Source: Diadema antillarum
Taxonomy: Eukaryota
Length of the DNA stretch: 64,000 nt
Assembly (NCBI RefSeq): GCF_040938485.1
Contig: NW_027270935.1
Location: 992,001-1,056,000, forward strand
Direction of reading: 5' to 3'
The translations under genes and the position numbers were made by a program. Below the pieces are notes generated by a model. It saw only the letters and a list, made by a program, of their open reading frames with translations. It was not told where the DNA came from and made no database searches. Positions 3,390-64,000 of this stretch are shown here, piece by piece (position 1 is the first letter of the stretch; the number at the start of each line of letters is the position of its first letter).

Positions 3390-6300
3390 TTGTGGTCAAA
3401 CTGAACAGGGTCATCTCTTGAAAATTGCCTTGGAAGGCTGGAATGTCGAAAAGAGAATGAGTACCTATTCTCAAGCCCGGAGTTTGTGGAAGGAATACCG
3501 CCATTTGCCTGTGAGTTTGCTGTACAGACTGGGATTGACCACCTCTTGGCAGCAGCAGATGAGGATGGACATGTGGTCATTTATGATACATATCGCACTG
3601 GACAAGAGGCACAAGTAAAAAGTAAGGTTACCAGGCAGTATTGCTGTTGTTGCTCATCCACAGGCAGCCTAGTTCTTTATAATGAACTTTTAAAGATTGT
3701 CAAATGAATCTGATAGAAGTTTTTGTTTTTGTTTTGTTTGTTATTTTAATTGTTTTATAAATTGACAAATGATTTGCAGTGTTCGAATTTGGAAATAAGA
3801 TAAAAAATATGAATTTCAAGAAAAAAAAAGTTTTCAAGGCTGTCAAATTTGTATGTATTTCATCATGAAATTGGCAGTGCTTTCTTCAACAATCATGTGG
3901 AATTGTGTACAAATAGTATAAAGGAAGTACAACCTGCACATTGCTTTGTAAAGATTTTGATTTTGATTGAAATTGAATGGCGTACACATAAAGTTTTGGC
4001 AAATAGGTAATTTGCATACTTTTAGAGTAGATGACTTAAAATCTTGAATCTTGAGTCATAGTTTCATGTACACTTTAAAAAGCATATAAGTATATTCATT
4101 GCTCGTAGAGTACAGTTTGTACAAGGACACAAAATGTAACATTTGTTTGCAGTTTTCTGTGTGTAGATGTTGATTGAACAAAGAACATTCAAGTTACATA
4201 CTCTATGTCTGTTCATTTCTTCTTCTTTTTTTTCATATGATGTTAGTTTGGTCAGCCCACAACAATGCCATCTTTGACACCGCATGGTCACCCACTGACC
4301 CCCGTCTGGTGACTGCGTCAGGTGACCAGACGGCTGCCCTATGGGATGTGAAGACATCCACCAAAGTAGCCTCGTTCCAGCAACACAAGTGCAGCCTCAA
4401 GTCGGTTAGCTTCCGTCCCTGGGATGGCCACATATTTGCGACAGGCGCACGCGATGGCAACATCATGATCTGGGATGACAGACGCAACAAAGGAGGTACA
4501 TGCTGTACACACTATGCATTTCATGATTGATTAAATTTGTAAACAACCATTTTTACAGAATGAGAAAACACCACATAATATGTCATGTTCAAAGAATCAC
4601 CTTTTAGTTGGGACGATAATATGTACAGGCAAATTTTTTTTTTCGTTTATATGTTGACATTGTTATCCATGTGTTCCTAATGAGAAGATTAGTTTAAAGT
4701 GATCTCAATTTCCATTTTTGTGAAAAAATAATTATGGTGCCATTTCTAGCATGGAAGACAAAAAAGAACATACATATTGTAGCTACCACCCCTGCTGTAG
4801 GAGGCTTCTCATCTGATCAAACCTTAAGGCATAATTTACCATAGCAGAAGAAACAAAAACCCAGCATCAGTACTTTAAAATAGTTCTAAAATGCGAGTTA
4901 GGGATAGAAACAACCAAATTTGAATATGTATAATCGATGTTAAGTATTGTTAGATATACAATTTATGAACAATAGTTATAATAAAAATGTTTCCAGACTA
5001 AACTGTCTACAGTTGAGGTTTAATGAGAAAAATACTGCTATCTCCTTATGTTTTAGGCTTTATTTCAAAAACTTTATATGGTAGGATGTTTTGTGATATA
5101 ACAGACCTACACATATGTGATATCTTGAACATTTTTTAAATCACTGCCCCCAAAGGTAAACAGGACCTTTAAATGAGTTTGTTGTGTGCATATATCCACA
5201 TTGCTGTTCAGCATTATTGATGTCTTCTGCAGTGAATACTCAATTTGATGATATGAAATTGCACTCAGACTGCAGGTACCATTTATTTTTAAATACTATG
5301 ACTTTAGATTAACATGTCTACAAGACCAACAACATTGTGTGTTGGGATTGATATTGGGACATTGGGATGGTATACTTCAAATATCTGTGTAAGCATAGTT
5401 CTTCACACTTCATTGCTATTGTGTTTCTCTTGTTACAACCAGGTACCAATCAGCACAAACCAGTGTTGGTCATCAAAAGCGCTCATGCAGACGAGAACAA
5501 GGTGAAGTCGCAGCCTCGGCGACGTGGGAAGCTAGCACCAAACCTCCCTGCAATTGATTCCTCGCAGAGTGTTAGTGTCGTCCTGTTTCAAAAGGAGGAC
5601 ACCCTCCTATCAGCAGGTGCAGCTGATGGGTAAGGCAAATGAGATGTTTTCTTCCCCATTTCATACCCTGATACTGACTGTGTTCAGATTCTGTTTCTGG
5701 TTGATGCCCAATGAAGGTCTTTGCAATCTGTCAATTTCACAGCTAGAGTTTGATAATCAAGCAGTGAGCTGTGTAATGTCATGTGGCTGTTCCTCTGCAT
5801 ACAGTTTGTTTCTCATGTTTCAAGTGTTTGTATCCTCTATGAGCAACTCTCCTTTATCCGTTTATTTGAGAGTACTGCATTACCGATGGGTAAACTTTGA
5901 TTTAGTAGAGGAGGTTATCATATTCACAATGTCATGAACAGTTTCTCTCGCTTTTGATGCTCTCTCCACAATTTTTTATTGCATTAAGTTTGCTACAACT
6001 ATGCAGTATTTCAAGATATGTTTTTATACCCAATAAATCATCCCAATTAACGTGAATGGGGATGAAATGATCAATGCATAGGAATTTTGTAAATAAGATC
6101 TATGCTCAGTGTAGCCAAAAGCCTGCTCCTAGTCATAGCAATGCTCATAAAGCTTTTCTGATATTGATAGCACTCAACACTTAGAGAATTTAAAAAGAAA
6201 TATAAAAGGAAGCTGCTTTTTTTAGCAGAGGATTCATTTATGTTTTTCTCTCCTTTTTTTATTAATTTGTCTTTAATTACAAGCATTGTGAAAGTGTGGG

Positions 6301-9300
6301 ACCTGAGAAAGATGAAGTCATCTGGTACATCCAACCTGAGTCCATTGCATCAGTTCCCTTACAGTGGATCTAGGAAGAGAAAGAGGGGTAAGACTCACAT
6401 GTTATACTTCTAGTTTCCACCTGGGACGCAGTGGCAGGAAGATGCTAAGATGTTATCAGTGCAATTAATCCCATCATTATGCACTAGATGTGCAACTTTT
6501 CTACATTGTTTGAGTATTTTGTTCGTACAGTTGTGCTTATCTGGGATTCCACCTTATGTCATACATACATCAGTGTTTTTATGCATATTTCTAACTGTAT
6601 CTGTTTCGTAGATTCCTTTTAGCTCATATGAGCTGAATGGCTCAAGTGAGCTATTGTGATCGCTGTCCATCTGGTGTCCAATGTGTGCTGCCTGTAAACT
6701 TTTTCTTATTTTCAACTCTTAGAGAACTTAGATTAGCCAATTTTCATATTTTGTTTTAATTTTTTTCTTCCTTAAAACTGGTGCCTGGATTTTGACCAAA
6801 CTTTGCAGGACATGGCAGGAGGGGGCTATAGTTTGTACAAATGGTGATGTCCCAAGGGGGGGGGGGGGGGGGGGGGGGGGGGGCTCTGGGGCTCTGGGGC
6901 TGGGCCCAAGTACCCAAAATTAGGTGGATGTTGCCCAGGGGGCCTGCAGCAATCCCCAAGTCTCAAGATTGATTTATGTAAAAGCTTGCGTCTGGTAGAG
7001 TGCTATGAAGGTGAAGGACAATGTTCATGTGAGCATTAAACCCACTGGTTTTGTGTGTTTTCAGAGAAAAAGCTCTATCAAATGTCATGTTTCTATCTTT
7101 GTGGCCTCTGTTGATAGTGAAGTATTGGAGATTGTTGAATTATATTTTTGCAAATTTTATTCCCTTTTGTCAAGTTGCAGTGTGGGCAAGTATGGAGATG
7201 ATGATAACAATTAGAATGAAGGAATTTGTCCATTAAATTTATACTCAATCTAAAATGTTGCTCCTAGTCTAGTGTATGTTACATGTTTTTTTTTTTAACT
7301 TAACACATACTTGCCAACTAATAAGATTTTATCAGATTCAGTAAGATTTTTTACATTAAAAATAGCAAAATAAGATTTTCTGTCAGAGAAATAAGATTTT
7401 AAAAAAATATTTAGATATACTTTTCATGTGTATTTTCTGAAGATTTGACTGAAAGTAAGGTTTTTAACTTCAGTTTGCATATAAAATAAGATTTTTGCAA
7501 TCCATGAGTAAGATATTTCATCTTGAAATGTTGGCAGGTATGTTAACAGCCATCCATCCTTTTTTCCATTGATTCTTGATTTCACTGTTTAATTTGTACT
7601 TGTTCACAGGCTTTTCATCCTTGGCCCTCAGTTCATCACGAACTCGACTGTTTGCAAGCTGCACAGATAGTGTTATCTATGAATATGATCTTGGAGGAGC
7701 GCTATGCTCCATCCCATTGAGCCAGTACAGCGGTCACATGAACTCCACCTTCTTTGTACGAGCAGCTCTCTCGCCGAATGACCTCTTCCTTTTGTCTGGG
7801 TCCAGTGACAACCATGCCTATATTTGGAAGGTATGCTCTATGGTTTGCGGACATTCTGAGGGAGTAGTTAATGCATGCTAGCCAGTCATCAGGCAAGCTT
7901 CAGCTTGACAAAATATGTACTGTGGATTCCAGAGAGTAGATCTGTCCATGAATTGAACTACTTTCTTTTTAGTCAACCCTGTCAGATTAGGAGCTTGTGT
8001 TTCATCCTAATTTGTTTTTATGTTGATGTCAATGGATATCACATTAAATATATCACACTTGACAGCAAAGCTAAGGACTAATGGGAGAAAAGTAAATCAG
8101 TGTTCACATTCCTTGATTACATACAGAAATCGTTTGTTTTTGCCACCTGGTAGTCTGTTGGGTGTTTATATTTGAATGCTCAATTTCATTAGTGTTTAAT
8201 TTGGTTGCATGTTTGTTTTACGGTTTGCTGCAAAGTAGCCCTCTCATATACCGGTATACAAATGACGCACAGGTCTGAGTGCGTCAGTCGGAATTGTGTG
8301 CATAAGGTAACTATGGAATGCTTAACCCACGAGGCGAAGCCGAGTGGGTTTAGGCTAAATTCCATAGTTACCGCATGCACACTATATTCCGACTGACGCA
8401 CGAAAAGACATGTGCGTCATTTGATTTATAGAATGGGTAATTTTCTTGTCAAAAACCCAGTTTTCTATCGTGTTACCCGATGACAAAATTACTGGATGCA
8501 TTTCCTTTTGGCTTTCCGTAAAGGGCATGCATACCCGTACTTACGGTTTTTACTGGATGCATGGCCAGCCATGCATAAGTTTTTACTGGATGCATGGCCA
8601 AGCCGAGTGCGCGAACGCTTGCTTTAGTGCGCGAACCTTTGTTACAAGTACGCGTACTCTTGCTAAGTGCGCGATAACATATTTACCACTGTGACTCAGC
8701 GTGCGGCCAGTAAAAATGAACACACAGCTCTCGACCAATCAGATCGCAGCATTCTCGCTACCCATTCTATAATATTTGTTTGCTTCTGTGTAGATCGGAG
8801 AGCCAGAATGTCCGCCATTGACCCTGGTGGGTCATGAGGCTGAGGTCACAGCAGTGGCTTGGTGTCAGAGAGACTTCACGAAGGTGAGCATCTGTTTAAG
8901 GGTATGATTACGCAGATCACCCTTTCTATGGCCTAACAAACTGATCTCCAGTAATTGCACAAAATTTTGCATCAAAATAAAAAGATTGTAAATTTGTTGG
9001 ATTTCATAATTTAAGTTGTGCTTTTTCTTCTTCAAGGCAGGTAGAGGTTATGATAAGTGTGGGGTTTTATTGTATTGTGTTTTGTTTTTGTTTTTGTTTT
9101 TTGGATTGAATTGATATGAAAGACACATTTTTGAATTAGTCTTAAATTGGCAACAAATCACCCCCATATTGGTTCCTGTAGTGAAGTATCTTTGTTATGA
9201 AATTAACGTGAAAGGGACCATGTTTACCATCTAGTCCCAACTTTCTAGCTCTGATATTGAATCTTGCCCCTCAAAATTGATAACCAATGTGAATGATAGA

Positions 9301-46985: not shown

Positions 46986-49900
46986 TACGTGTATGGTGCA
47001 AAATGTTTACCTTTGATCTTTAGCCCATTGCATGGCCTCAAACTTTATTTATTATATGCAGAATCAACCTTTACCTGATAATACTTTCAATGTGTACATG
47101 TAGTTTCATGAAAATAAATTCAGAAATTGTACATGTTGATATATATAGAGATGTTGGGAAAATGGTGGACTTGTAGTATAACCTTGACCTAAGATCATTG
47201 CCTCTGATAGGCACAGCATATTAGTGCACTCATACAGTGTGCATGTAAGTGACACTGGGCTTGCATTATTGTCACCTTCCCTCCCCAGGTATATAGCATC
47301 ACGATCATGAGAATGAGTACTAGGGACATGACATAATAATTTAGTGCTTATTTTATTCCTAATGCGAATGAGAAGGAAGAGAATAAGTGTATGAATATGC
47401 TTGTACATTACCATCACCAATACATAAAAGGTGTAATCACACACTCGTATGTATAAATAACAATATCAATATGAAGCTATAATTGAGTGTATAGTGTTAT
47501 TAGATATAGTGTCGATAATAGTGCAAAAAAAGACACTAAATGTTTTGAAAATGACATATATATAGGGAGCAGTGGAATACAATCCCCATGACCATATGGA
47601 TGGATCTGAAAGGGTTACTTTCTAGTTTTTCATTAACCAATCCATCATACCGTTAAGATGAAAGCCAGTCTAAAACTTTATCTATATTTCATGAGAATGA
47701 AAAAAAAAATCCAGGAGAACACTGCAAAAATGATAAAATCAGATTTAAAAAAAAGGAAATAATGACATTCTGATATAAAAATTTCGGAAGACACTCCTTG
47801 TCCCGTTGCTATGAATGAATGAATGAATGAATGAAGAAAATGAAGGACTACTCAGAGTCAACTTTATTGATCTGTATATCACAGTACATAGAAATTTAGC
47901 TTCCAGTTCATCCAACTTGTTACACACAAATAATCATTAAACACACATGCGTGCAGACACACACACACAATCAAACAGCGAGTGACATGCCCGAAAGAAA
48001 AAGACAGGAAAGGATTCCCATACGGTGGAATTCTTTGAAAAAAGAAAGGTCTCTTTAATAAATAATCAAACAATCCTGAAACATTGAAAATAGACAAGAC
48101 ATGTATGTAACAGAAGTGTATTCAAATCAAATCACAGCAGATAATAAACATGAAGCAAAAATGAATATGAGTCCCCAAGAAGCAGAGCTTGTGAGTGGAG
48201 CCCATTGTGAATGTACAACATTTTACAGTGTGAAAGGAAACTTGATTTATAGATGAGACATCTGGGACATTGCCCCTGCAGACTGGGAAAAAACAAATAA
48301 ATAAAGAAACAAACAAAGAAACAAACATACCCTCTATCATGAAAATCACCTGTTATTTTCTTAATCCGTCATATCTCCAGATGTTCATTATGTGTGCACT
48401 TCCTTTATTGCAAATAAATAATGAACCACACATTCAAAATGTGCTTTAAAAACGAAATTAATAAGTGCCGGTAGGCCCGATAGTAAATCAGCGCCCAACA
48501 TGCGTTCTTTTTTGTTACATCTCATGAATATTCATTTCAGATCTCAGCGAGCCGTCCGGGTTTTTTTCCACACGCATACATTGCGTATTATAGTATGTGC
48601 TACGTTTTATCCATATTCGCGCATGCGCTGTGTAAGTCGTACCACAATACGAAATGCGGTAGGACTTTAAAACCCTCGGATAAACTCTTTCACAGGGCTC
48701 TCAAAACAGATCATATTGTAAATCGACTTCGCCTGCTGTGATTGTAAGTATCTTATCTAAGAGTAAGGCTACAAATTTCAGTATAAAACCCTGTATTTTG
48801 GTCTCTGGTCACCTAAATGCTAAGCCATATCAGGTGCTTCCGTGACAGGATAGGCCTTGCGGTGCGACCCCTTTACGGTACGTATTTGTCCGTATGGGGT
48901 CGCTGCTGCGGTTAGGGCCTAATTAAATTTACTACACTAAACTTACCGTTCTCCACTGTCGTTTCTCACACCTTGTTTGGTACGATTTCTTCCATTTTAT
49001 ATCACTTTATCCGTTCCCTTTGTACTTTGAAGTATTTTACGTAATTCTTTCAAGTGTCTCGCACTGCTATTTTCGTAACGGCGATTTTTCCGCTTGCTGC
49101 AATCACTTTTTCGAACCGAGGCGACGAAGTTTGATACCAGCCGCTTTAGTGTGCTGTGGACTGTCTTTCTAAATACATGTACCGGTATTTGGGAGGTGTT
49201 GATACTTTGTATTTGTTATTTTATTTTCCTAGGTGTTTGTCTCGAGGGACTACATTGTATGCGTGTTTCTTAATGTTGATAGGAAAAGGCTAAAATTGTC
49301 TGGGTGATGTCTGATGGTGGTGATGATAACTATGCTGGTGGAAAAAGACGGCTTACTGTGAATGCTGAGCGTACGTGCCGTTTGTTTTATTTCACTTTCC
49401 CTCTTATTCTTCTTTCCCCCTTACTCTTCTTTTCCCTCCCAAGAATGATAAAAAAAGAAATTACATACACCTCACAACAAAAAAGAACCACGTGCTACCA
49501 ACCTTCGTAAAGTTAAATCTAAATGTTCAACATCAGCAAAGAATAAGGGGAAAGCACGAATGACAATAAATCAGAGCGAAGAGATTGTGTTACATGCAGT
49601 CTCTTCGGCTCGAAGAAACTTGACACCCCACCTCTCTCCCCTTGTGGAAATTTCCACAAAAGCAGGTGCCACACCCAGGTGCGTGCCAGACGAAAGAATG
49701 CGCGCACTGAAATAAACAGCGTGTAAATATCCTGGAAATATCGATCGAAGAATCAGCTCATTAGTTGAATTAAAGGAATCATTGCAAAGATATCGTGATT
49801 CTATAGCCTTTCTTTTGGCGCATAGTAGGAAACATCAAACAGTCGAATATAGTGTACTTGATCGAATATCTTATGTTCCCTGAACACTAAAAAAAAAAAA

Positions 49901-51014
49901 GATCGATTAATCAGTCAATTAAAATTGCAATCACAGAAATAAAAAGGTCTCGTATGCCCAGAGAAATTCACTACGAGTAGGTTCAATGAGATGCAGTCAT
50001 CACCTGGTTAGACAGCAAAATCATGACAATTAATTTCAGTTCACGCTCATCATAACTGCTTATTACTTATCAAAGTTTTGGCTATCAACATTCGTTCGTA
50101 CGTGTTTTTTGTTTGTTTGTTTTGTATGTTTTTCCTCAAGTGAAAGACGTAATGATTTCTTTGTATCGAACGTAGACTGTATGTTTACCGTTTATCCAAA
50201 CAGTAGGCGCCTAGGCGTACTTTCTGAATATATTCAGAAATTTCTATCAACATTTTAAATATATTACAAGACTCCCAAATACCAGTTAAAAAAAAAATAA
50301 GAAATCAAATTTTTGAGATATGAACAACAACAAAAAATAACTAGACTCGGAATTTGTCAACACTGACAAATTAGGTGATCCGATCTCTTCGAAAGTCAAT
50401 GATTTGAGTCCTGATCCCAATAGGCATGACCGTAAAGGTTCATCTGTGGTTATGGACATTGGCCGTGTGATGTTTGGATTCTCATTTAAAAAAAAGGGAG
50501 TCGGGTTTGCCATCTTTGGTACCATATTCCGTATACACTATAACGAAGATACAGAATAAAGTATATTTGACCATTGACCCCACTTTGCACAGCCAAGATG
50601 GCATCTGAGAAAGAAATGGTTATTTTGTGAAATGATCCTGGTAACGTGATCTTTGTGTGTGCAAAATATTGGAAAGATAGGACATGTATTCACCAAGATA
50701 CAGGATGAAACATTTATGACCTTTGACCCTAATTTACATACCCAAGATGGTGTCTGATCAAGAAGTTGTTATTTTATGAAATAATGTAGGTGACATGAAC
50801 TAAACATGTGCAAAATATGGGATTGATAACCATTGTTGTTCTTCATCTATTGCACAGAATGTAGTAGAAAGAAAGAAAAATAAAGAAAAAATTATGTTAT
50901 TTTATAGAAATTTGAAGGAGAAGCATTAAAAAATCAGAAAAAGATAAAAATAGGAAGGGAGATTAAGACTAAATAAAGAAAAAGAAGAAAAAAAGAGTTT
51001 GAAAAAAAAAATAT

Positions 51015-51084
51015 TGGCAAGGGTGAGGCTCGAACCAGGGACCTTAGGATTACGAGTCGGATGCGCTATGCAATGACCTATTTC
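51015..51084 (-). pseudogene. Degenerate tRNA-like module (CGT anticodon position) in array unit 1
   Basis: Minus strand: A-box-like TAGGTCATTGCATAGCGC, loop CTCGTAA, B-box-like GGTTCGAGCCT, then a T run. Confidence 0.5.
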
Positions 51085-54000
51085 ATGCTCCATAGGCCCT
51101 GTGTATTAAGCAAAATGACGCTGCATCGAAGCCACGTGCCATTTTCAACCAAGTTTTTCGACGTGATGCCGGCCTCGTATGAAAAAATGGAGGGCACATT
51201 AACGATAGCCCAAAGTCTCAGCTACAACATACTAAAATCTGGGAAAAATTCACCGAAGCATAAGTGAGCTAATGCTCGAAAAAGATAGTCATGTCAATTT
51301 TCACTGCCAGAAAAACTGCTCTCCCATAGAGATAACACGTAAACTGGTCAAATTTGACAAGATTACATTTAATCCATTTTTACGAGGTGATGCCGCCATC
51401 CAATCAAAATGTTGTTATTACATTAATGAAAGAACATTTAATAAGCTACAACATACTGAAATCTGGGTGAAAATTGGCAAAGGATAAGTGAGATACGCCC
51501 AAGTAAACTTGAAAATTGATGACGTCATTTTGAAAATTTACTTTTTTTACTTTATTAAGAAATTTGATATCTTTGAATCACTTTTTCAGTATCGCCAACC
51601 CATAAACTGACATGTACAACTCATCAGCTTTCAGAATATGTAAAGAAAATTGGGGGTCACCGTCCATCCTGACGAGTAAAATCGGATTTAAAATTGGCGG
51701 TTTTGGGGCATTGTTGTACTGTATATCGCCATTGACGCGCGCGCGGAATTTCAACTTTGACAGTCCCGTATGACGTCATATTGAGTCGGATTGACTTGAA
51801 ACTTGCTAGAAATATTCCTTGACTTTTCAGACATCCGATAAATGTAAAAAATCGGGAAATTTCTGTTGCATATGAGCTGTACGTGCGTATATGTGCGCGC
51901 GCGTACGCGTCCGTCCAATTTTTTCAATTTTTCAAAAAATGCTCCAAATGGTCTGAAACGTATACAAAAAAAATTTGAGCTTGATTGGAGCATACAAATA
52001 TTTCAACGCGCGCGTACGCGCACGTCTTTACGATGCGAGGAATTCTGAAAATATGGGTAGAATTCCCTTGAATTGAAATTTATGTGACGTAAATTTCATT
52101 GAGAAATTCCACTCCATTAATGAGATATGATTGAAAATGTGTTTTCATATAATGACGTCATAGTGACGTCACGGTCGACTGATCACTACGATTTTACTTG
52201 ACATGTCGTCTTTGGGACATGATACACATATGGTATAAGTTTGACATTCATAGGCAATGCACTTTCTGAGCTAGTCTCTACACAACTTTTGCGGAGAAAT
52301 AAAGAAGAAGAAGAAGAAGAAGAAGAACTAGAGATTGTAATTTGTCATTACTGACAAATTAAGGTGATCCGATTTTTTTTTTCATCAATGATTCCAGTCC
52401 TGATCGCAATAGGCATGACCATACAGGTTTCGTCTGTTGTTAAAAACGTTGGCCGTGTGATGTTTGAATTCTCGTTTAGAAAAGGGAGTCATATCTGCCA
52501 TCTTTGGTACCAAATTCCGTATACACTAGATAACGAAGATACAACAAATACATATGACCTTTGACCCACCTTTACACTCGCAAGATGGCATCTGAGGAAA
52601 AGGTAGTTATTTTGTGAAATGATTCTTGCGACATCGTCTATACGTGTGCAAAATATGGGAAAGATAGGACAGGTATTCGCCAAGATACAAGATGAAACAT
52701 TTATGACCTTTGACCCTAATTTACATACCCAAGATGGTGTCCGATCAAGTAGTTGTTATTTTATAAAGTAATGTACGTGACATGAACTAAACATGTGCAG
52801 AATATGGGGGTGATAGGGCGTGTTTTTCTTGAGTTATTGCAAAGAAAGTTGATAGATAGCGCAAAGTCTCAGCTACAACATATTAAAATCTGGGAGAAAT
52901 TCACCGAAGGGTAAGTGAGCTAGTGCTCGATAAAGACAATCATGTCAATATTCACATTAAAAAAAATTCCCTCCCATAGAGATAGCACGTCATAACGAAG
53001 AAGTACATATGACCTTTGACCTCAATTTGGACAGACAAGATGGCATCTGAGTAAAAAGTGGTTATTTTGTGAAATGATCCTTGTAACATGGTCTTTGTGT
53101 TTGCGAAATATGGGAAAGATAGGACATGTATTCACTAAGATACAGGATGAAACACTTATGACCTTTGACCCTAATTTACATACCCAAGATGGTGTCCGAT
53201 CAAGGAGTTCTTATTTTATGAAATAATTCACGTGACATGAACTAAACATGTGCAAAATATGGAAGTGATAGAGTCCGTTTTTCTTGAGTTATTGCAAAGA
53301 AAGTTGCAGAAAGAAAGAAATATCTCAATACATCGAAGATAAGCCTGAATTTCAACCCAATTTTTTGAGGTGATTCTGACATCGTATGAAAAAACAAAGG
53401 GCACACTTACGGTAGCGTAAAGTCTCAGCTACAACATATTAAAATCTGGGAGAAATTTACTGAAGCTTAAGTGAGCTTGTGCTCGATAAAGATAGTCATG
53501 TCAATTTTCATTTCCAGAAAAACTGCACTCCCATAGAGATAACACGTAAACTGGTCAAATTTGACAATATTACTTTCAATCCATTTTTACGAGGTGATAC
53601 CGTTATCCAATCAAAATTTAATAATCTTATGTTTGAAAGAACATTAAATAAGCTACATCATACTGAAATTTGGGTGAAAATTGACAAAGGACTAGTGAGT
53701 TACGCTCGAATGAACTTGAAATTTGATGACGTCATTTTGAAAATTTACTTTTTTTACTTTATTAAGAAATTTGATATCTTTTAATCATTTTGTCAGCATT
53801 GCCAACCCATGAAATGACATGTACAACTCATAAGCTTTCAAAATATGTACAGAAAATGGGGGGTCACCGTCCACCCTGACGAGTAAAATCGCATTTAAAA
53901 TTGGCGGTTTTTTGGCATAGTTGCACTGTATATCGCCATTGACGCGCGCGCGGAATTTCAACTTTGACGGGCCCGTATGACGTCATATTGAGTCGGATTG

Positions 54001-55183
54001 ACTTGAAACTTCGTAGAAATATTCCTTGACATTTCAGGCAGCCGATAAGTGTGAAAAAACGGGAAATTTCTATTGCATATTAGCTGTGCGTGCGTATATG
54101 CGCGCACGCGTACGCGTCCGTCCGATTTTTTCAATTTTTTAAAAAATGCTCCAAATGGTCTGAAACGTGTCCAAAAAAATTTTGAGCTCGATTGGAGCAT
54201 ACAAATATTTTAACGCGCGCGTACGCGCACGTTTGAAGAGTACAGATGAATTTTGAGAACATGAGTAGAATCAACTTGATTCGAACTATATGTGAGGTAA
54301 ATTTCATAGAAAAATTCCATTCCATTAATGAGATATGAATGAGAATGTGTTTTCATATAATGACGTCATAGTGACGTCACTTTCGACTGATCACTATGAT
54401 TTTATTAGATCTGTCGTCTTTGGGACATGATACATATATGGTATAATTTTGACATTGATAGGATAAGGACTTTCTGAGCTAACCTCTACACAACATTTGA
54501 GGAGAAAGAACTTTTTTTTGTGACAACGGGAAGTTTAACACTAGAGATTGTAATTTGTCATTACTGACAAATTAAGGTGATCCGATTTTTTTTTTCATCA
54601 ATGATTCGAGTCCTGATCGCAATAGGCATGATGTTTGAATTCTCGTTTAGAAAAGGGAGTCATATCTGCCATCTTTTGTACCAAATTCCGTATACACTAG
54701 ATAACGAAGATACAACAACAAATACATATGACCTTTGACCCACCTTTACACTCCCAAGATGGCATCTGAGGAAAAAGTGGTTATTTTGTGAAATGATTCT
54801 TGCGACATCGTCTATACGTGTGCAAAATATGGGAAAGATAGGACAGGAATTCGCCAAGATACAAGATGAAACATTTATGACCTTTGACCCTAATTTACAT
54901 ACCCAAGATGTTGTCCGATCAAGTAGTTGTTATTTTATGAAATAATGTACGTGACATGTACTAGGCATGTGCAAAATATGGGATTGATAGCCATTGTTGT
55001 TGTTCATCTATTGCACAGAAAGTAGTAGAAAGAAGAAAAATAAAGAAAAAATTATGTTATTTTATAGAAATTTGAAGGAGAAGCATAAAAAAATCAGAAA
55101 AAGATAAAGTAAGGAAAGGGAGATTAAGATTAACTAAAGAAAAAGAAGAAAAAAAGTGTTTAAAAAAATTAAAAAAAAAATAT

Positions 55184-55253
55184 TGGCAGGAGTGAGCCTC
55201 GAACCAGGGACCTTAGGGTTACGAGTCGGATGCGCTACGCAATGACCTATTTC
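55184..55253 (-). pseudogene. Degenerate tRNA-like module (CGT anticodon position) in array unit 3
   Basis: Near-identical to 51015-51084: TAGGTCATTGCGTAGCGC, CTCGTAA, GGTTCGAGGCT, then a T run. Confidence 0.5.
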
Positions 55254-58200
55254 ATTCTCCATAGGCCCTGTGTATTAAGCAAAATGACGCTGCATCGAAG
55301 CCTCGTGCCATTTTCAACCAAGTTTTTCGAATTGATGCCGACATCGTATGAAAAAATGGAGGGCACACTTACGGTAGCGTAAAGTCTCAGCTACAACATA
55401 TCAAAATCTGGGAGAAATTTACCGAAGGGTAAGTGAGCTAGTGCTCGATAAAGATAGTCATGTCAATTTTCATTTCCAGAAAAACTGCACTCCCATAGAG
55501 ATAACACGTAAACTGGTCAAATTTGACAATATTACTTTCAATCCATTTTTACGAGGTGATGCCGTCCTCCAATCAAAATGTTGTAATTATATTAATGAAA
55601 GATCATTTAATAAGCTACAATATACTGAAATCTGGGTGTAAATTGGCAAAGGATAAGTGAGATACGCTCGAGTGAACTTGAAATTTGATGACGTCAATTT
55701 GAAAATTTACTTTTTTTACTTTATTAAGAAATTTGATATCTTTTAATCATTTTGCCAGCATCGCCAACCCATGAAATAACATATCCAACTCATCAACTTT
55801 CAGAATATGTAAAGAAAATGGAAGGTTACCGTCCATCCTGACGAGTAAAATCGGATTTAAAATTGGCGTTTTTTTGGCATCGTTGCACTGTATATCGCCA
55901 TTGACGCGCGCGCGGAATTTCAACTTTGACGGGCCCGTATGACGTCATATTGAGTTGGATTGACTTGAAACTTGGTAGAAATATTCCTTGACATTTTAGG
56001 CATCTGATAAATTTAACAAAACGGGAAATTTCCATTGCATATGAGCTGTGTGTGCGAATATGTGCGCGCGCGTACGCGTGCGTCCAATTTTTTCAATTTT
56101 TCAAAAAATGCTCCAAATGGTCTGAAACGTGTGCAAAAAAAATTTGAGCTCGATTTGAGCATACAAATATTTCAACGCGCGCGTACGCGCACGTTTTAAG
56201 AGAAAATATCAATTTTGAGAATATGAGTAGAATGCGCATAATTTGAAATGTATGTGACGTAAATTTCATTGCAAAATTCTATTCCATTAATGAGATATGA
56301 ATGAAAATGTGTTTTCATATAATGACGTCATAGTGACGTCACGATCGACCAATCACAATGATACAATAGATTTGTCGTCTTTGGGACATGATACATATAT
56401 GGTATGAGTTTGAAGTTGATACTCTGGGTACTTTCTGAGTACGTAGATACACAACTTTTGTCCAGAAATAAAGAAAGAAGAAGAAGAAGAACAAAGAATC
56501 CGTACAGATACAGAAGGTGATCCGAGAGGATACTCGGATCACCTAACTAGAACCGGAATTTGTCAACATTGACAAATTAGGTGATCCGATCTCTTCGAAA
56601 ATCAATGATTTGAGTCCTGATCCTAATAGGCATGACCATACCGGTTTCATTTGTGTCGAGGAGACATTGGCCGTGTGATGTTTGGATTCTCATTCAGAAA
56701 AGGAAGTCAGACTTGCCATCTTTGGTACCGAATTCCGTATCCACTAACAAAGATACAGAATGAAGTATATTTGACCTTTGACCCCACTTTGCACACCCAA
56801 GATGGCATCTGAGCAAAAAGTGGTTATTTAGTGAAGTGATTATTGTAACATGCCCTTTGCGTGTGCAAAATATGGGAAAGACAGGACATGTATTCACCAA
56901 GATACAGGATGAACAATTTGTGACCTTTGACCCTAATTTACCTACCCAAGATGGTGTCCGATCAAGTAGTTGTTATTTTATGAAATAATGTACGTGACAT
57001 GAACTAAACATGTGCAAAATATGGGGGTGATAAAGGCTGTTTTTCTTGAGTTATTGCAAAGAAAGTTTCAGAAAAAAAATCATAAAACATCGAAGATAAG
57101 CTTTAATTTCAACCAAGTTTTTTGACATGATGCCGACGTCGAATGAAGAAACGAATTGCACATTACGATAGCCCAAACTCTCAGCTACAACATATTAAAA
57201 TCTGGGAGAAATTCACTGAAGGGTAAGTGAGCTAGTTCTCGATAAAGACAACCATGTCAATTTTCACATCTAGAAAAATTCCCTCCCATAGAGATAACAC
57301 GTCATAACGAAGATAGAGGAAAGAAGTACATATGACCTTTGACTCCACTTTGCACAGACAAGATGGCATCTGAACAAAACGTGATTAATTTGTTAAATGA
57401 TTCTTGTAACATGGTCTTTGCGTGTGCAAAATATGGGAAAGATAGGACATGTATTCACCAAGAAACAAGATAAAACATTTATGACCTTTGACCCTATTTT
57501 ACATACCCAAGATGATGTCTGATCAAGTAGTTGTTATTTTATGAAATAATGTACGTGACATGAACTAAACATGTGCAAAATATTATGCTTATAGAGCTTG
57601 TTTTTCTTGAGTTATTCCAAAGAAAGTTGCAAAAAGAAAGGAATATCTCAATACATCGAAGATAAGCTTTAATTTCAACCAAGTTTTTAGACGTGATCCC
57701 GACATCAAATGAAAAAATAGAGGACATATTTACGATAGCCCAAAGTCTCAGCTACAACATATTAAAATCTGCGAGAAATTCACCGAAGCATAAGGGAGCT
57801 AGTGCTCGATAAAGATAGTCATGTCGATTTTCATTTCCAGAAAAACTGCACTCCCATAGAGATAACACGTAAACTGGTCAAATTTGACAAGATTACTTTA
57901 AATCCATTTTTACGAGGTGATGCCGTCATCCAATCAAAATGTTATTATTACACTAATGAAAGAGTATTTATTAAGCTACATCATACTGAAATCTGGGTGG
58001 AAATTGGCAAAGGATTAGTGCGATACGCTCGAGTGAACTCGAAACTTGATGACGTCATTTTGAAAATTTACTTTTTTTATTTTATTAAGAAATTTGTTAT
58101 CTTTTAATCATTTTTTCAGCATCGCCAACCCATGAAATGACATGTACAACTCATCAGCTTTCAGAATATAAAAAGAAAATGGGGGGTCACCGTCCATCCT

Positions 58201-61200
58201 GACGATTAATATCGGATTTAAAATTGGCGGTTTTTTGGCATTGTTGCACTGTATATCGCCATTGACGCGCGCGCGGAATTTCAACTTTGACGGGCCCGTA
58301 TGACGTCATATTGAGTCGGATTGACTTGAAACTTGGTAGAAATATTACTTGACATTTCAGGCATCCGATAAATGTAAAAAAACGGGAAATTTCAGTTGCA
58401 TATGAGCTGTGCGTGCGTATATGTGCGCGCGCGTACGCGTCCGTCCAATTTTTTCAATTTTTCAAAAATTGCTCCAAATGGTCTGAAACGTGTGCAAAAA
58501 AAATTTGAGCTCGATTGGAGCATACAAATATTTTAACGCGCGCGTACGCGCGCGTTTTAAGAGAAAATATGAATTTTGACAATATGAGTAGAATGCGCAT
58601 AATTTGAAATATATGTGACGTAAATTTCATTGAAAAATTCCATTCCATTGATGAGATATGTTTGAGAATGTGTTTTCATATAATGACGTCATAGTGACGT
58701 CACGGTCGACTGATCACTATGATTTTATTAGACCCGTCGTCTTTGGGACATGATACATATATGGTATAAGTTTGAAATTGATAGGAAGAACACTTTCTGA
58801 GCTAATCGATACACAAATTTTGTCCAGAAATAAAGAAAGAAGAAGAAGAAGAAGAAGAACACCCAACAAAGAATCCGTACAGATACAGAAGGTGATCCGA
58901 GAGGATACTCGGATCACCTAACTAGAACCGGAATTTGTCAACACTGACAAATTAGGTGATCCGATCTTTTCTGAAATCAATGATTTGAGTCCTGATCCAA
59001 ATATTCATGACCATACAGGTTTCATCTGTGTTTTGATTGGACATTGGCCGTGTGATGTTTGGATTCTCATTTAGAAATAGACCTGCTATCTTTGGTACCG
59101 AATTCCGTATACACTAGCGGAAATGCAGAATGAAGTATATTTGACCTTTGACCTCGCTTTGCACACCCAAGATGGCGTCTGAGCAAAAAGTGATTATTTT
59201 ATGAAATGATTCTTGTAACATGGTCTTTACGTGTGCAAAATATGGGAAAGATAGGACATGTATTCACCAAGATACAAGATGATACATTTATGACCTTTGA
59301 CCCTAATTCAAATACCCAAGATGGTGTCCGATCAAGTAGTTGTTATTTTATGAAATAATGAACGTGACATGAACTAAATATTTACTAAATATGGGGGTGA
59401 TAGGGTATATTTTTCTCGAGTTATTGCAAAGGAAGTTGCAGAAAGAAAGAAATATCTCAATACATCGGAGATAAGCTAATTTCAACCACGTTTTTTGACA
59501 TGATTCCGTCTTCGTATGAAAAACAAAGGGCACACTAGCTATAGCGCAAAGTCTCAGCTACAACATGTTAAAATCTGGGAGGAATTCACCGAAGGGTAAG
59601 TGAGCTAGTGCTCGATAAACACAATCATGTCAATTTTCACATCTAGAAAAATTCCCTCCCATACAGATAACACGTCATAACGAAGATACAGGAAGAAGTA
59701 CATATGACCTTTGACCCCACTTTGCACAAACAAGATGGCCTCTAAGCCAAAAATGGTTATTTTGTGAAATGATCCTTGTAACATGGTCTTTACGTGTGCA
59801 AAATATGGGAAAGATAGGACATGTATTCACCAAGATACAGGATAAAACATTTATGACCTTTGACCCTAATTTACATACCCAAGATGGTGTCTGATCAAGT
59901 AGTTGTTATTTTGTGAAATAATGTACGTGACATGAACTAAACATGTGCAAAATATGGTGGTGATAGGATATGTTTTTCTTGAGTTATTGCAAAGAAAGTT
60001 GCAGAAAGGAAGAAATATTTCAATACATCGAAGATAAGCTTCAATTTCAACCAAGTTTTTGGATATGATGCCGACTCCGTATGAAAAAACGAAGGGTATG
60101 AAAAAACGAAGGGCACACTTATGATAGCCCAAAGTCTCAGCTACAACATACTAAAATATGGGAGATATTCACCGAAGCATAAGTGAGCTAGAGCTCGATA
60201 AAGATAGTCATGTCAGTTTTCATTTCCAGAAAAAGTGCACTCCCATAGAGATAACACGTAAACTGGTCAAATTTGACAATGTTACTTTTAATCCATTTTT
60301 ACGAGGTGATGCCGTCATCCAATCAAAATGTTGTTAATATATGACTGAAAAACCATTTAATAAGCTACAATATATTGAAATCTGGACGAAAATCAATAAA
60401 AGAATAAGTGAGATACGCTTGAGTGAACTTAACATTTGATGACGTCATTTTGAAAATTTGCTTTTTTTTACTTTATTAAGAAGTTTGATATCTTTTCATC
60501 ATTTTTCCAGCATCGCCAACCCATGAAATAACATGTACAACTCATCAGCTTTCAGAATATGTAAAGAAAATGGGGGGTCACCGTCCATCCTGACGAGTAA
60601 ATTCGGATTTAAAATTGGCGGTTTTTTGGCATTGTTGCACTGTATATCGCCATTGACGCGCGCGCGGAATTTCAAATTTGAAGGGCCCGTATGACGTCAT
60701 ATTGAGTCGGATTGACTTGAAACTTGGTAGAAATATTCCTTGACATGTCAGGCATCCGATAAATGTAAAAAAACGGTAAATTTCTCTTGCATATGAGCTG
60801 TGCGTGCGTATATGTGCGCGCGCGTACGCGTCCGTCCAATTTTTTCAATTTTTCAAAAAATGCTCCAAATGGTCTGAAACGTGTGCAAAAAAAATTTGAG
60901 CTCGATTTGAGCATACAAATATTTCAACGCGCACGTACGCGCACGTTTAAAGAGAAAATATGAATTTTGAGAAATTGAGTGGAATGGGCATAACTTGAAA
61001 TATATGTGACGTAAATTTCATTGAAAAACTCCATTCCATTAATGAGATATGAGTGAGAATGTGTTTTCATATAATGACGTCATAGTGACGTCACGATTGA
61101 CCAATCACAATGATATATAAAATTTGTCGTCTTTGGGACATGATACATATATGGTACGAGTTTGAAGTTGATACTGTGAGTACTTTCTGAGTACGTAGAT

Positions 61201-64000
61201 ACACAAATTTTGTCCAGAAATAAAGAAAGAAGAAGAAGAAGAAGAAGAAGAAGAACAAAGAATCCGTACAGATACAGAAGGTGATCCGAGAGGATACTCG
61301 GATCACCTAACTAGAGATTGTAATTTGTCATTACTGACAAATTAAGGTGATCCGATTTTTTTTTATCAATGATTCGAGTCCTGATCGCAATAGGCATGAC
61401 CATACAAGTTTCATCTGTGTTTAGAGACATTGGCCGTGTTATGTTTGCATTGTCATTTAGCAAAGGGAGTCATATCTGCCATGTTTGGTACCAAATTTTG
61501 TATACATTATAACGAAGAGACAGCAACAAGAACATATGACCTTTGACCCACCTTTGCACTCCCAAGATTGCATCTGATGAAATAGTGGTTATTTTGTGAA
61601 ATGATTCTCGCGACATCGTCTATACGTGTGCAAAATGTGGGAAAGATAGGACAGGTATTCACCAAGATAGAAGATGAAACATTAATGACCTTTGACCCTA
61701 ATTTACATACCCAAGATGTTGTCCGATCTAGTAGTTGTTATTTTATGCAATAATGTACGTGGCATGAACTAAACATGTGCAAAATATGGGGGTGATAGGG
61801 CGTGTTTTTCTTGAGTTATTGCAAAGAAAGTTGCAGAAAGAAAGAAATATCTCAATACATAGAAGATAAGCTTTGATTTCAACCAAGTCTTTTATCGTGA
61901 TCCCGACTTCGTATGGAAAAACGAAGGGCAATTGAACGATAGCGCAAAGTCTCAGCTACAACATATTAAAATCTGGGAGAAATTCACCGAAGGGTAAGTG
62001 AGCTAGTGCTCGATAAAGACAATCATGTCAATTTTCACATTTAAAAAAAATTCCCTCCCATAGAGATAACACGTCATAACGGAGATACAAAAAGAAGTAC
62101 ATATGACCTTTGACCTCAATTTGCACAGACAAGATGGCATCTGAGTAAAAAGTAGTTATTTTGTGAAATGATCCTTGTAACATGGTCTTTTCGTGTGCAA
62201 AATATGGGAAGAGTAGGACATGTATTCACTAAGATACAGGATGAAACACTTATGACCTTTGACCCTAATTTACATACCCAAGATGGCGTCTGATCAAGTA
62301 GTTGTTATTTTATGAAATAATTTACGTGACATGAACTAAACATGTGCAAAATATGAAAGTGATAGAGGCCGTTTTTCTTGAGTTATTGCAAAGAAAGTTG
62401 CAGAAAGAAAGAAATATCTTAATACATCGAAGATAAGCTTGAATTTCAACCAAAATTTTTGACATGATCCCGACATCGTATGAAAAAACGAAGGGCACAC
62501 TTACGGTAGCGTAAAGTCTCAGCTACAATATAGTAAAATCTGGGAGAAATTTACCGAAGGGTAAGTGAGCTAGTGCTCGATAAAGATAATCATGTCAATT
62601 TTCATTTCCAGAAAAACTGCACTCCCATAGAGATAACACGTAAACTGGTCAAATTTGACAAGATTACTTTCAATCCATTTATACGAGGTGATACCGTTAT
62701 CTAATCAAAATTTTGTTATTTTGTGTTTGAAAGAACATTAAATAAGCTACAACATACTGAAATCTGGGTGAAAATTGACAAAGGACTAGTGAGATACGCT
62801 CGAATAAACTTGAAATTTGATGACGTCATTTTGAAAATTTACTTTTTTTACTTTATTAAGAAATTTGATATCTTTTAATCATTTTGTCAGCATTGCCACC
62901 CCATGAAATGACATGTACAACTCATCAGATTTCAAAATATGTAAAGAAAATGGGGGTCACCGTCCATCCTGACGAGTAAAATCGGATTTAAAATTGGCGG
63001 TTTTTTGGCATAGTTGCACTGTATATCGCCATTGACGCGCGCGCGGAATTTCAACTTTTACGGGCCCGTATGACGTCATATTGAGTCGGATTGACTTGAA
63101 ACTTGGTATAAATATTTCTTGACATTATACACATCCGATCAAAGTGAAAAAACTGGAAATTTAAATGGCATATGAGCTGTGCGTGCGTATATGCGCGCGC
63201 GCGTACGCGTCCGTCCAATTTTTTCAATTTTTCAAAAAATGCTCCAATTGGTCTGAAACGTGTGCAAAAAAATTTTGAGCTCGATTTGAGCATACAAATA
63301 TTTCAACGCGCGCGTACGCGCACGTTTTAAAGTAGAGATGAATTTTGAGAAAATGACTAGAATGAGCTTGACTTGAAATACATGTGACGTAAATTTCATT
63401 GAAAAATTCCATTCCATTAATGAGATATGATTGAGAATGTGTTTTCATATAATGACGTCATAGTGACGTCACGGTCGACTGATCACTTTGATTTTTGTTC
63501 GATTGTCGTCTTTTTGACACGATACATAAATGGTATAAGTTTGACATTCATAGACAATGCACTTTCTGAGCTAACCTCTACACAACTTTTGGGGAGAAAT
63601 AAAGAAAAAAAAGAAAGAATCAGTACAGATACAGAAGGTGATCCGAGAGGATACTCGGATCACCTAACTAGAGATTGTAATTTGTCATCACTGACAAATT
63701 AAGGTGATCCGATTTTTTTTTAATCAATGATTCGAGTCCTGATCGTAATAGGCATGACAATACAAGTTTCATCTGTGTTTAGAGACATTGGCCGTGTGAG
63801 GTTTGGATTCTCATTTAGAAAAGGGAGTCATATCTGCCATCTTTGGTACCAATTCTGTATACACTGAATAACGAAGATACAGCAACGAATACATATGACC
63901 TTTGACCCACCTTTACACTCCCAAGATGGCATCTGAGGAAAAAGTGGTTATTTTGTGAAATGATTCTTGCGACATCGTCTATATTCGTGTGCAAAATATG

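What the first reader, a model, noticed from the sequence alone, without database searches (positions are those of the whole stretch)
50339..64000. At least 13.6 kb head-to-tail concatemer of full-length HINE-like units, a rolling-circle-type macrosatellite
Seen: units of about 1987, 2213, 2006, 2375, 2389 and 2357 bp plus a seventh start. Each begins with an inverted repeat and the subterminal motif AGGTGATCCGA. Four junctions carry a 12-bp hairpin built from the same motif, followed at once by the next unit's AACTAG with no spacer or TSD. Known: this end structure matches Helentron-associated interspersed elements, and Helitrons/Helentrons can form tandem arrays. Inferred: it records rolling-circle concatemer insertion or repeated self-targeting, a stage in satellite birth from a TE. 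The two junctions without the hairpin (~52326, ~54539) suggest separate events.
Basis: partly seen in the sequence, partly recalled or inferred. Interest (0 to 1): 0.7.

Follow-up and report, generated by a model that had tools for sequence, protein, structure and literature searches.

The report
Self-nested Helentron transposon array
The repeat block is real: it is the first 13.7 kb of a 63.6-kb pile-up of non-coding rolling-circle (Helentron-type) jumping elements that keep landing in each other's A/T-rich spots, a clean and unusually large example of a known behaviour, not a new kind of element.

Summary
Observation confirmed. Window 50339-64000 holds six full units and a seventh start, at exactly the stated boundaries. 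The array runs on for 63.6 kb (about 30 units, all in one orientation).

The units are HINEs, the non-coding partners of Helentrons.
- Seven of 21 young copies sampled are solo, in A|A (= T|T) sites.
- The genome holds more than 100 open Helentron genes of 3381-3800 aa (OTU, Rep, helicase, AP endonuclease).
- One Helentron family shares the hairpin end and another shares the AACTAG end.

- Neighbouring units are only 82-93% alike, yet each has a 94-100% relative on another contig.
- Hairpin-less junctions are insertions into a resident unit's (AAG)n microsatellite. A filled-versus-empty pair shows this directly.
- The first unit's missing 55-nt tail lies at the far end of the array, 61 kb away.

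Rolling-circle concatemers or unequal crossover may explain a few 97-99.9% identical blocks outside the window.

Long-read confirmation of the assembly was not possible. Verdict: a new member of a known kind, of moderate interest.

The parts
48913..50338 (.). Left flank: the end of an unrelated 1.43-kb dispersed repeat with an A-rich terminus (...AACAACAACAAAAAAT). The array starts directly after it.
   Evidence: about 39 copies elsewhere, at 89-99% identity, match query positions 614-2039. Nearly all of them end at window 50338.
50339..52325 (+). Unit 1, body only (end type AACTAGACTCGG). It stops at the end of its (AAG)n run and has no hairpin.
   Evidence: It is 99.4% identical to the intact unit at extended 66011-67992. 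Its matching 55-nt tail lies at extended 113685-113739.
52326..54538 (+). Unit 2 (end type AACTAGAGATTG), inserted into the (AAG)n run of unit 1. It ends in the alternative terminus CTTTTTTTTGTGACAACGGGAAGTTTAA(C) in place of the microsatellite tail and hairpin.
   Evidence: Its nearest relative is on contig C562 (L019, 97%).
54539..56544 (+). Unit 3 (starts CACTAGAGATTG), complete, with the hairpin at 56515-56544.
   Evidence: Its nearest relative is C631:37036 (94%).
56545..58919 (+). Unit 4 (end type AACTAGAACCGG), a very young copy, with the hairpin at 58890-58919.
   Evidence: full-length copies at 99.8-100% identity on C1086, C433, C301 and at C47:1098721, and more than 15 copies at 97%. 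The C301 copy (L005) is solo in non-HINE DNA. No ORF exceeds 101 aa.
58920..61308 (+). Unit 5 (end type AACTAGAACCGG), with the hairpin at 61279-61308 and (AAG)n at 61227-61255.
   Evidence: It is 89% identical to unit 4 and sits on a long branch in the tree.
61309..63665 (+). Unit 6 (end type AACTAGAGATTG), with the hairpin at 63636-63665.
   Evidence: Its nearest relative is on C1270 (L015, about 98.7%).
63666..64000 (+). The start of unit 7 (end type AACTAGAGATTG). The unit continues to extended coordinate 66011.
50546..50822 (+). Internal central repeats of the units: a 149-bp period, 1.9 copies. A second example lies at 56750-57025, and each sits inside a roughly 560-bp internal duplication.
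   Evidence: Tandem Repeats Finder; u4 positions 201-758 against 761-1326, 86% identical.

Best explanation
This is a nest of non-autonomous Helentron elements (HINEs), built mainly by repeated insertion of new copies into copies already there.

How it works, as far as shown:
- The family inserts without a detectable target duplication between A|A. This is T|T on the strand that the HINE convention calls sense.
- Insertion has a fixed orientation relative to the A/T-rich strand.
- Every unit carries such sites itself: the A (T) at its ends, and an (AAG)n/(CTT)n microsatellite about 55 nt from the hairpin end.
- Resident copies are therefore preferred landing pads, and newcomers arrive in the same orientation.

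Two kinds of junction result:
- Insertion at a resident's end gives the spacer-less hairpin|AACTAG junction.
- Insertion into the microsatellite gives a hairpin-less junction and pushes the resident's 48-55-nt tail downstream.

Unit 1 came first, next to the A-rich end of another repeat. The following 61 kb sits inside its microsatellite.

Mobilisation in trans by the genome's young 32-kb-plus Helentrons (Rep-helicase-AP endonuclease) is inferred, not shown. So is the idea that the endonuclease or Rep picks the A/T run. Block duplications add to the array outside the window.
For: Identity of the units:
- The units are non-coding.
- Read as the reverse complement, a unit has a 12-bp-stem palindromic subterminal repeat at the terminus, with (CTT)n just inside it. 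The matching repeat lies 34 nt from the CTAGTT-3' end and a 9-bp-stem palindrome lies 12 nt from it. This is the layout described for HINE and DINE-1 (PMC4067079, PMC2374699).
- Seven solo copies sit in non-HINE DNA with A...A flanks.

Partners:
- There are 146 Rep hits; more than 100 lie in open frames of 3381-3804 aa.
- The 3444-aa ORF has OTU, Helitron_like_N, PIF1 and Exo_endo_phos domains. It carries the Helentron signature YFYRIEFQQRGSPHTH.
- At least 15 copies of that 32-kb element are identical up to their own (AAG)n. On C1161 the element then ends in the same hairpin, followed at once by AACTAG of a HINE.
- Eleven copies of the 3381-aa family begin exactly at AACTAGAGATTG...AGGTGATCCGA.

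Mechanism:
- Window neighbours are 82-93% alike. In a tree of 71 unit segments, each window unit with an informative nearest row (units 1-4 and 6) has its closest relative on another contig, at 94-100%.
- With its 2.37-kb insert removed, the C53 locus aligns at about 99% to an intact two-unit junction in this array. The insert sits between (AAG)n and the tail.
- Hairpin-less starts are matched by stacks of orphan tails, and the nesting depth never goes negative.
- The outermost orphan tail is the only one identical to the tail of unit 1's 99.4% twin.
- Fourteen of 21 young copies lie in HINE DNA, in at least five different contexts.
- A T-run on the plus strand received units in the inverted orientation.
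Against: - No empty allele of the whole nest was found.
- The only reads on hand were short contigs, so the 63.6-kb assembly has no independent support.
- Some blocks inside the array are 97-99.9% identical: three tandem copies of 1868 bp here (plus a dispersed copy of the unit) and four copies of 1822 bp on C631. These need duplication or rolling-circle read-through, not insertion.
- A two-unit block is shared between C47 and C53 at about 99%, so multi-unit copying also occurs.
- The nesting count ends at depth 2-3 rather than 0, because of truncated fragments.
- The hairpin end of the 3381-aa family could not be fetched.
- The 3444-aa family has a different other end, AATAAAGAGCCCTCGG.
- The 14-of-21 figure has no measured genome-wide baseline.
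Confidence: 0.72

Rival explanations
1. Rolling-circle concatemer. Replication ran past the terminator repeatedly, or copied a circle many times, and a ready-made multi-unit molecule was inserted in one event.
For: Head-to-tail order with no spacer at four junctions. Terminator bypass and tandem Helitron arrays are documented (PMC4067079, section 15; Xiong et al. 2016, as summarised in PMC12628747). Identical adjacent blocks occur outside the window: three tandem copies of 1868 bp at extended 88254-93866, and four copies of 1822 bp on C631.
Against: A concatemer is born with identical units. The window's units are 82-93% alike, belong to at least three end types, and have closer relatives on other contigs. 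The model does not predict bodies on the left paired with stacked orphan tails on the right. The pattern described by Xiong et al., many 5' ends with one 3' end in truncated near-identical units, is not what is seen here.
Confidence: 0.1
2. Classical satellite dynamics. A first dimer was expanded and reshuffled by unequal crossing-over or segmental duplication, and the units diverged afterwards.
For: Blocks repeated within the array at 97-99.9% identity: 50338-52328 = 66011-67992; 63862-65943 = 78797-80871 = 95752-97722; and 80871-84372 = 92099-95594.
Against: No pair of units inside the window exceeds 93%. In-place divergence cannot give unit 4 copies at 99.8-100% identity that are solo on other contigs. 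It does not explain the orphan-tail bookkeeping or the filled-versus-empty pair.
Confidence: 0.1
3. Assembly artefact. A high-copy repeat was mis-joined into an array.
For: The family is very abundant (4986-7241 first-look candidates; summed depth of about 10^5 in short-read contigs). Two 99.9% identical copies of unit 4 lie 50 kb apart on the contig. No long reads were available.
Against: There are no Ns. Neighbouring units are diverged enough to assemble unambiguously. The same junction types recur on many contigs. The exact body-and-tail bookkeeping across 61 kb is not what mis-joins produce.
Confidence: 0.04

Closest known systems
HINE / DINE-1 non-autonomous Helentrons (Thomas, Vadnagara & Pritham 2014, PMC4067079; Yang & Barbash 2008, PMC2374699)
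   Same: Non-coding. Subterminal inverted repeats, palindromic at one end. A microsatellite in the 5' block and central tandem repeats. A short palindrome close to the 3' terminus. Insertion in TT or T-rich sequence with no target duplication. Termini shared with Rep-helicase-endonuclease Helentrons.
   Different: The subterminal repeat is 11-12 bp and lies 0-2 nt and 34 nt from the termini, slightly outside the published ranges. The partner's ORF is antisense to the conventional element orientation; this is reported for Helentron-Da-40 only. The partners are very large, at 32 kb or more. The units form arrays of up to 63.6 kb.
Tsp transposons of the sea urchin Strongylocentrotus purpuratus (Cohen, Liebermann & Kedes 1985, listed as DINE-1-like in PMC4067079)
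   Same: A heterogeneous family of non-coding DINE-1-like elements with tandem repeats, in a sea urchin.
   Different: The paper is not held in the library, so no sequence comparison was possible. Any relationship is untested.
Tandem Helitron arrays from terminator bypass or rolling-circle amplification (Myotis and Bombyx as cited in PMC4067079; plant centromeric Helitrons, Xiong et al. 2016, as summarised in PMC12628747)
   Same: Head-to-tail arrays of rolling-circle transposons, and a possible route to satellite DNA.
   Different: Those arrays are near-identical, often truncated units with many 5' ends and one 3' end. Here the units are diverged members of several subfamilies, with bodies and tails that pair up.
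Transposon dimers formed through insertion-site preference as satellite seeds (McGurk & Barbash, as summarised in PMC12628747)
   Same: Insertion preference for the element's own sequence creates tandem copies during periods of activity.
   Different: That work describes mostly dimers of other transposon classes in Drosophila. Here it is about 30 units of a Helentron partner, with the target inside the element's own microsatellite.
Satellite-like repeats carried by Helentron or HINE elements in oysters and Drosophila (Cg170/Cg_HINE, DINE-TR1; PMC8268682, PMC12628747)
   Same: Helentron partners linked with tandem repeats, and complex 'shuffled' loci of nested and truncated elements.
   Different: There the expanding repeat is the short internal central repeat. 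Here the repeated unit is the whole 2-2.4-kb element.
IS200/IS605-family HUH transposons such as IS608 (my own knowledge, not tested here)
   Same: Single-strand HUH transposition, in which the target is a short sequence that also flanks the element's own end. Insertion next to a resident copy is therefore natural, and orientation is fixed.
   Different: These are bacterial elements with a different enzyme architecture and no endonuclease domain. This is an analogy of mechanism only.

Membership tests
HINE (non-autonomous Helentron) | No coding capacity | tested here: met
   The longest ORF in unit 4 is 101 aa. Across the whole 63.6-kb array only two open frames reach 150 aa or more (153 and 184 aa). 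tblastn with the 3444-aa Helentron protein finds nothing in the window plus the next 60 kb.
HINE (non-autonomous Helentron) | 12-15-bp subterminal inverted repeats, about 2-4 nt from the 5' terminus and about 38-60 nt from the 3' terminus, palindromic in mite-type HINEs | tested here: met
   Read as the reverse complement, AGGTGATCCGA(G) lies 0-2 nt from the terminus and is part of a 12-bp-stem palindrome. TCGGATCACCT ends 34 nt from CTAGTT-3'. The length (11-12 bp) and the distances sit at the edge of the published ranges.
HINE (non-autonomous Helentron) | A 5-10-bp palindrome 8-35 nt from the 3' terminus | tested here: met
   AATTTGTCA-NNNN-TGACAAATT, a 9-bp stem, ends 12 nt from the terminus. 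It folds at -9.2 to -9.5 kcal/mol.
HINE (non-autonomous Helentron) | Insertion in TT or T-rich sequence without target-site duplication, with variable terminal Ts | tested here: met
   In 7 solo copies the flank next to the hairpin end always starts AA, and the base before ACTAG is A in 6 of 7. The filled-versus-empty comparison shows no loss or gain beyond the ambiguous A run. No true allelic empty site was obtained.
HINE (non-autonomous Helentron) | Microsatellite and central tandem repeats | tested here: met
   (AAG)n at 52302-52327 and 61227-61255. A 149-bp repeat of 1.9 copies at 50546-50822 and 56750-57025. An internal duplication of about 560 bp.
HINE (non-autonomous Helentron) | Termini shared with an autonomous Helentron that encodes Rep, helicase and AP endonuclease | tested here: met
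   The hairpin end and about 3 kb next to it are shared with the 3444-aa family (L009). The AACTAG end and about 1 kb are shared with the 3381-aa family. Domains are and the Helentron Rep signature. No single family was shown to carry both ends, because fetching was exhausted.
Canonical Helitron | 5' TC and 3' CTRR ends, a hairpin about 11 nt from the 3' end, insertion between A and T | tested here: not met
   The ends are AGGTG... and ...CTAGTT in the conventional orientation, and the flanks are T...T (= A...A).
Rolling-circle concatemer array (Xiong et al. 2016 type) | Near-identical, often truncated units, with many 5' ends and a single 3' end | tested here: not met
   The window's units are 82-93% alike, full length, and mostly carry both ends. 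Their closest relatives lie on other contigs.
Satellite or macrosatellite DNA | An array homogenised by amplification in place, with units closest to each other | tested here: not met
   In the unit tree, array units are interleaved with dispersed copies: the label 'C47' needs 16 changes. Only some blocks outside the window are 97-99.9% alike.

The most novel reading that the evidence does not exclude
Self-targeting is a built-in strategy of this Helentron lineage. On this reading the element-encoded AP endonuclease or Rep nicks the element's own (CTT)n microsatellite and terminal T-runs. The family thereby makes its own safe landing pads. The resulting arrays of many terminators also let the 32-36-kb autonomous elements carry off variable numbers of HINE units. 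That would make these arrays a directly observable early stage of macrosatellite formation from whole transposons.
Probability: 0.2. Interest if true: 0.6.

Novelty: new member of a known kind. Interest (0 to 1): 0.4.

Why it matters
The locus shows, at base-pair resolution, how a rolling-circle transposon family can build a tandem array tens of kilobases long by insertion preference alone. It needs no satellite-type amplification, and the displaced ends still pair up across 61 kb. The genome also holds many near-identical, open-frame Helentrons and HINE copies at 99.8-100% identity. This sea urchin therefore looks like a good natural system for a superfamily whose transposition has never been studied biochemically. 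For annotation the lesson is practical: such arrays should be read as nested transposons, not scored as satellites. The hairpin end is the conventional 5' end.

Tried and rejected
- Tandem Repeats Finder does not see the array, because its longest period is 500 bp. BLAST self-comparison was used instead.
- A search for Helentron coding remnants in the window and the next 60 kb found none. This array is not the tail of a resident autonomous copy.
- The first autonomous copy examined (C631, 3444-aa family) lacks AGGTGATCCGA in its first 32 kb and has a different left end. I first took it for a non-partner. Its right end then proved to be the HINE hairpin.
- The empty-site test for the whole nest failed. 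The left flank is itself a dispersed repeat.
- Read laying gave only 85-280-nt short-read contigs, so it offers no test of long-range order.
- The Tsp paper (PMC367020) is not held.
- RFX X-boxes, reported by other notes for a related family, are absent from the window's units.
- The idea that the hairpin-less junctions are deletions was rejected, because the missing tails are found downstream.
Full report
**1. The observation**

The window is G000:C47:992001-1056000 of a 1.75-Gb assembly in 2963 contigs. Earlier notes of this scan call it the sea urchin Diadema antillarum. I did not check this. It fits with 'echinoderm metagenome' runs holding part of the sequence.

BLAST of 50000-64000 against the window shows a head-to-tail series of 2.0-2.4-kb units that are 82-93% identical. 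Nothing similar lies upstream of 50322.

- AGGTGATCCGA occurs 15 times against 0.53 expected.
- Four junctions read ...AGGTGATCCGAG-AGGATA-CTCGGATCACCT|AACTAG... with no spacer.
- The 12-bp stem folds at -13.4 kcal/mol (z = -6.4). The 9-bp palindrome at the other end folds at about -9.5 kcal/mol.

**2. Extent of the array**

I fetched the next 60 kb of the contig. The array continues to extended coordinate 113936 (C47:1105936). That makes 63.6 kb and about 30 units, all on one strand. Two insertions of other DNA interrupt it, at about 74.9-78.8 kb and 109.4-112.2 kb. It ends ...CACCT|AAAAATGCATAGG in non-HINE sequence. On the left it abuts the A-rich end of an unrelated 1.43-kb dispersed repeat whose copies nearly all stop at window 50338.

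**3. What the units are**

The units have no ORF longer than 101 aa. Unit 4 (56545-58919) has full-length copies at 99.8-100% identity on four other places and at 97% on more than 15. I examined 21 such copies.

- Seven lie in non-HINE DNA. Their flanks are ...A|ACTAG...CACCT|AA....
- Fourteen lie in or against other HINE sequence.

The genome has 146 Helitron_like_N hits. More than 100 sit in open frames of 3381-3804 aa with no stops. One of these ORFs (C631:12229-22560, 3444 aa) carries OTU, Herpes_teg_N, DUF6570, Helitron_like_N, PIF1 and Exo_endo_phos domains. It also has the Rep motif YFYRIEFQQRGSPHTH. Thomas et al. (PMC4067079) give the Ser between Gly and Pro, and the F/Y-x-R just before, as the marks that separate Helentrons from Helitrons.

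**4. Shared ends**

*The 3444-aa family.* At least 17 copies begin at the same base, C631:86. At least 15 are identical up to C631:31979, the end of the element's own (AAG)n run. In most copies about 75 nt then follow before a HINE unit starts. On C1161 this stretch is in hand: (AAG)n, AAAGAATCCGTACAGAAACAGA, the hairpin, then AACTAG of a HINE (L009). The last 3 kb or so of this 32-kb element is 84-91% identical to HINE units. Its other end, AATAAAGAGCCCTCGG..., is not the HINE end.

*The 3381-aa family.* Eleven copies begin their mutual homology exactly at AACTAGAGATTGTAATTTGTCATCACTGACAAATTAAGGTGATCCGA. About 1 kb of HINE-like sequence follows.

**5. Orientation**

Thomas et al. describe HINEs as follows (PMC4067079):
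- 12-15-bp subterminal repeats, 2-4 nt from the 5' terminus and 38-60 nt from the 3' terminus;
- a 5-10-bp palindrome 8-35 nt from the 3' terminus;
- T-rich flanks.

DINE-1 has its microsatellite in the 5' block (PMC2374699).

- TT|AGGTGATCCGAG...CTCGGATCACCT, a palindromic 5' repeat at 0-2 nt;
- (CTT)n about 25-55 nt further in;
- central repeats;
- TCGGATCACCT, 34 nt from the end;
- the 9-bp palindrome, 12 nt from the end;
- CTAGTT-3'.

The partner's ORF is then antisense to the element. Thomas et al. report this arrangement for Helentron-Da-40.

**6. How the array was built**

Six lines of evidence point to stepwise insertion into resident copies.

(a) Neighbours are 7-18% diverged and belong to at least three end types. 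In a tree of 71 homologous 1.17-kb segments, each window unit with an informative nearest row has its closest relative on another contig: unit 1 at 100% (C53), unit 2 at 97% (C562), unit 3 at 94% (C631), unit 4 at 100% (C301, C433, C1086), and unit 6 at about 98.7% (C1270). Unit 5 sits on a long branch. The label 'C47' needs 16 changes on the tree.

(b) A filled-versus-empty pair exists. On C53 a unit-4-type copy lies between the (AAG)n run and the 57-nt tail of a unit. That unit's counterpart in this array (66012-68044) is intact and is followed by the same neighbour. With the insert removed, the two loci align at about 99%.

(c) Parsing the array into unit starts and hairpin ends shows the expected bookkeeping. 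Every hairpin-less start is followed later by orphan tails of 48-55 nt, stacked one after another (88308, 88362, 90230, 92098, 97768, 113684, 113739). The nesting depth never goes negative.

(d) Unit 1's body stops exactly where its 99.4% twin continues AACAAAGAATCAG...AGGATT-loop hairpin. The only orphan tail with that exact 55-nt sequence is the outermost one, at 113685-113739. The 61 kb in between is therefore nested inside unit 1.

(e) The strand rule holds in every junction I looked at. The hairpin end is always next to A on the plus strand, which is T before the conventional 5' end. On C83 a T-run on the plus strand of a unit received units in the inverted orientation. The same is seen on C631.

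(f) The junction at 54539 follows a recurrent alternative terminus (CTTTTTTGTGACAACGGGAAGTTTAAC). Elsewhere this terminus is followed by different unit types, so it too is a landing site or a variant end, not a deletion.

**7. What insertion does not explain**

- Outside the window the array holds blocks at 97-99.9% identity. One example is three tandem copies of a 1868-bp block made of a unit plus an orphan tail. C631 has four identical 1822-bp copies.
- A two-unit block is shared between C47 and C53.

These need block copying. Unequal crossing-over and rolling-circle read-through to a later terminator are both possible, and the data do not separate them. The nesting count ends at depth 2-3, because truncated fragments and a 197-bp mini-element add starts without tails.

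**8. Limits**

- The only runs offered were short-read contig sets. They show a very abundant family present under three organism labels, but cannot test long-range order.
- No allelic empty site was obtained.
- No single autonomous family was shown to carry both HINE ends.
- The enrichment of young copies in HINE DNA (14 of 21) has no measured baseline. Even if HINE DNA made up 10% of the genome, the binomial probability would be about 6e-10 (my arithmetic, no tool call).
- The roles of the endonuclease and Rep in choosing A/T runs are inferred from Thomas et al.'s hypothesis, not tested.

**9. Comparison and verdict**

The following are all published (PMC4067079, PMC12628747):
- HINE/DINE-1 architecture;
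- Helentron partners;
- tandem Helitron arrays;
- Helitrons lying directly next to one another;
- transposon dimers formed by insertion preference as seeds of satellites.

A note of this scan (s1-220773) reported a four-element nest of the same kind on other DNA of this genome. My analysis agrees with it and extends it to a 63.6-kb case.

The finding is a large and well-resolved new member of a known kind. It is not a concatemer inserted in one piece, and it is not yet a satellite.

Noticed in passing
G000:C631:86 to about 32050 (L039, L037, L038, L040); Rep hits listed: A giant, apparently active Helentron. It is about 32 kb long with a single 3444-aa open frame (OTU x2, Herpes_teg_N-like, DUF6570, Rep, PIF1 helicase, AP endonuclease). 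At least 15-20 copies are 99-100% identical over the 4-6-kb stretches searched across the element, and more than 100 open frames of 3381-3804 aa exist genome-wide. Copies often lie head-to-tail, 29-44 kb apart, with HINE arrays of variable length between them.
   Followed up: partly
G000:C631:55160-55650 (L042): A second, related HINE family with a different palindrome (AGGTGATACGC-N6-GCGTATCACCT). It shows at least six stacked palindromic ends about 55-75 nt apart, each preceded by T-rich sequence. This is the same nesting signature, in the opposite orientation.
   Followed up: no
Extended coordinates 74923-78800 (L032:923-4800), outside the window: The array is interrupted by an element that starts with the same AACTAGAGATTG end. 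It carries two perfect RFX-type X-boxes (GTTGCCATGGCAAC) 150 bp apart, at 75563 and 75713. The window's own units have none. This is probably the X-box-bearing HINE family reported in other notes of this scan.
   Followed up: partly
window 48913-50338: A 1.43-kb dispersed repeat with about 39 copies at 89-99% identity, nearly all ending at the same A-rich terminus directly before the array. Its type was not determined.
   Followed up: no
G000:C631:86-130 (L039) compared with window 50339-50360: The octamer CTCGGAAT lies 7-12 nt from the end both in the 3444-aa Helentron (AATAAAGAGCCCTCGGAAT) and in type-C HINE units (AACTAGACTCGGAAT). It resembles the hairpin arm CTCGGATCACCT and may be a shared recognition motif. 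This is untested.
   Followed up: no
against coordinates (C280, C433, C83, C53, C631, C203): On six contigs the HINE arrays found with unit 4 lie 7-50 kb from a Helentron Rep hit. In all six they are on the same strand and on the side of the ORF's 3' end.
   Followed up: partly
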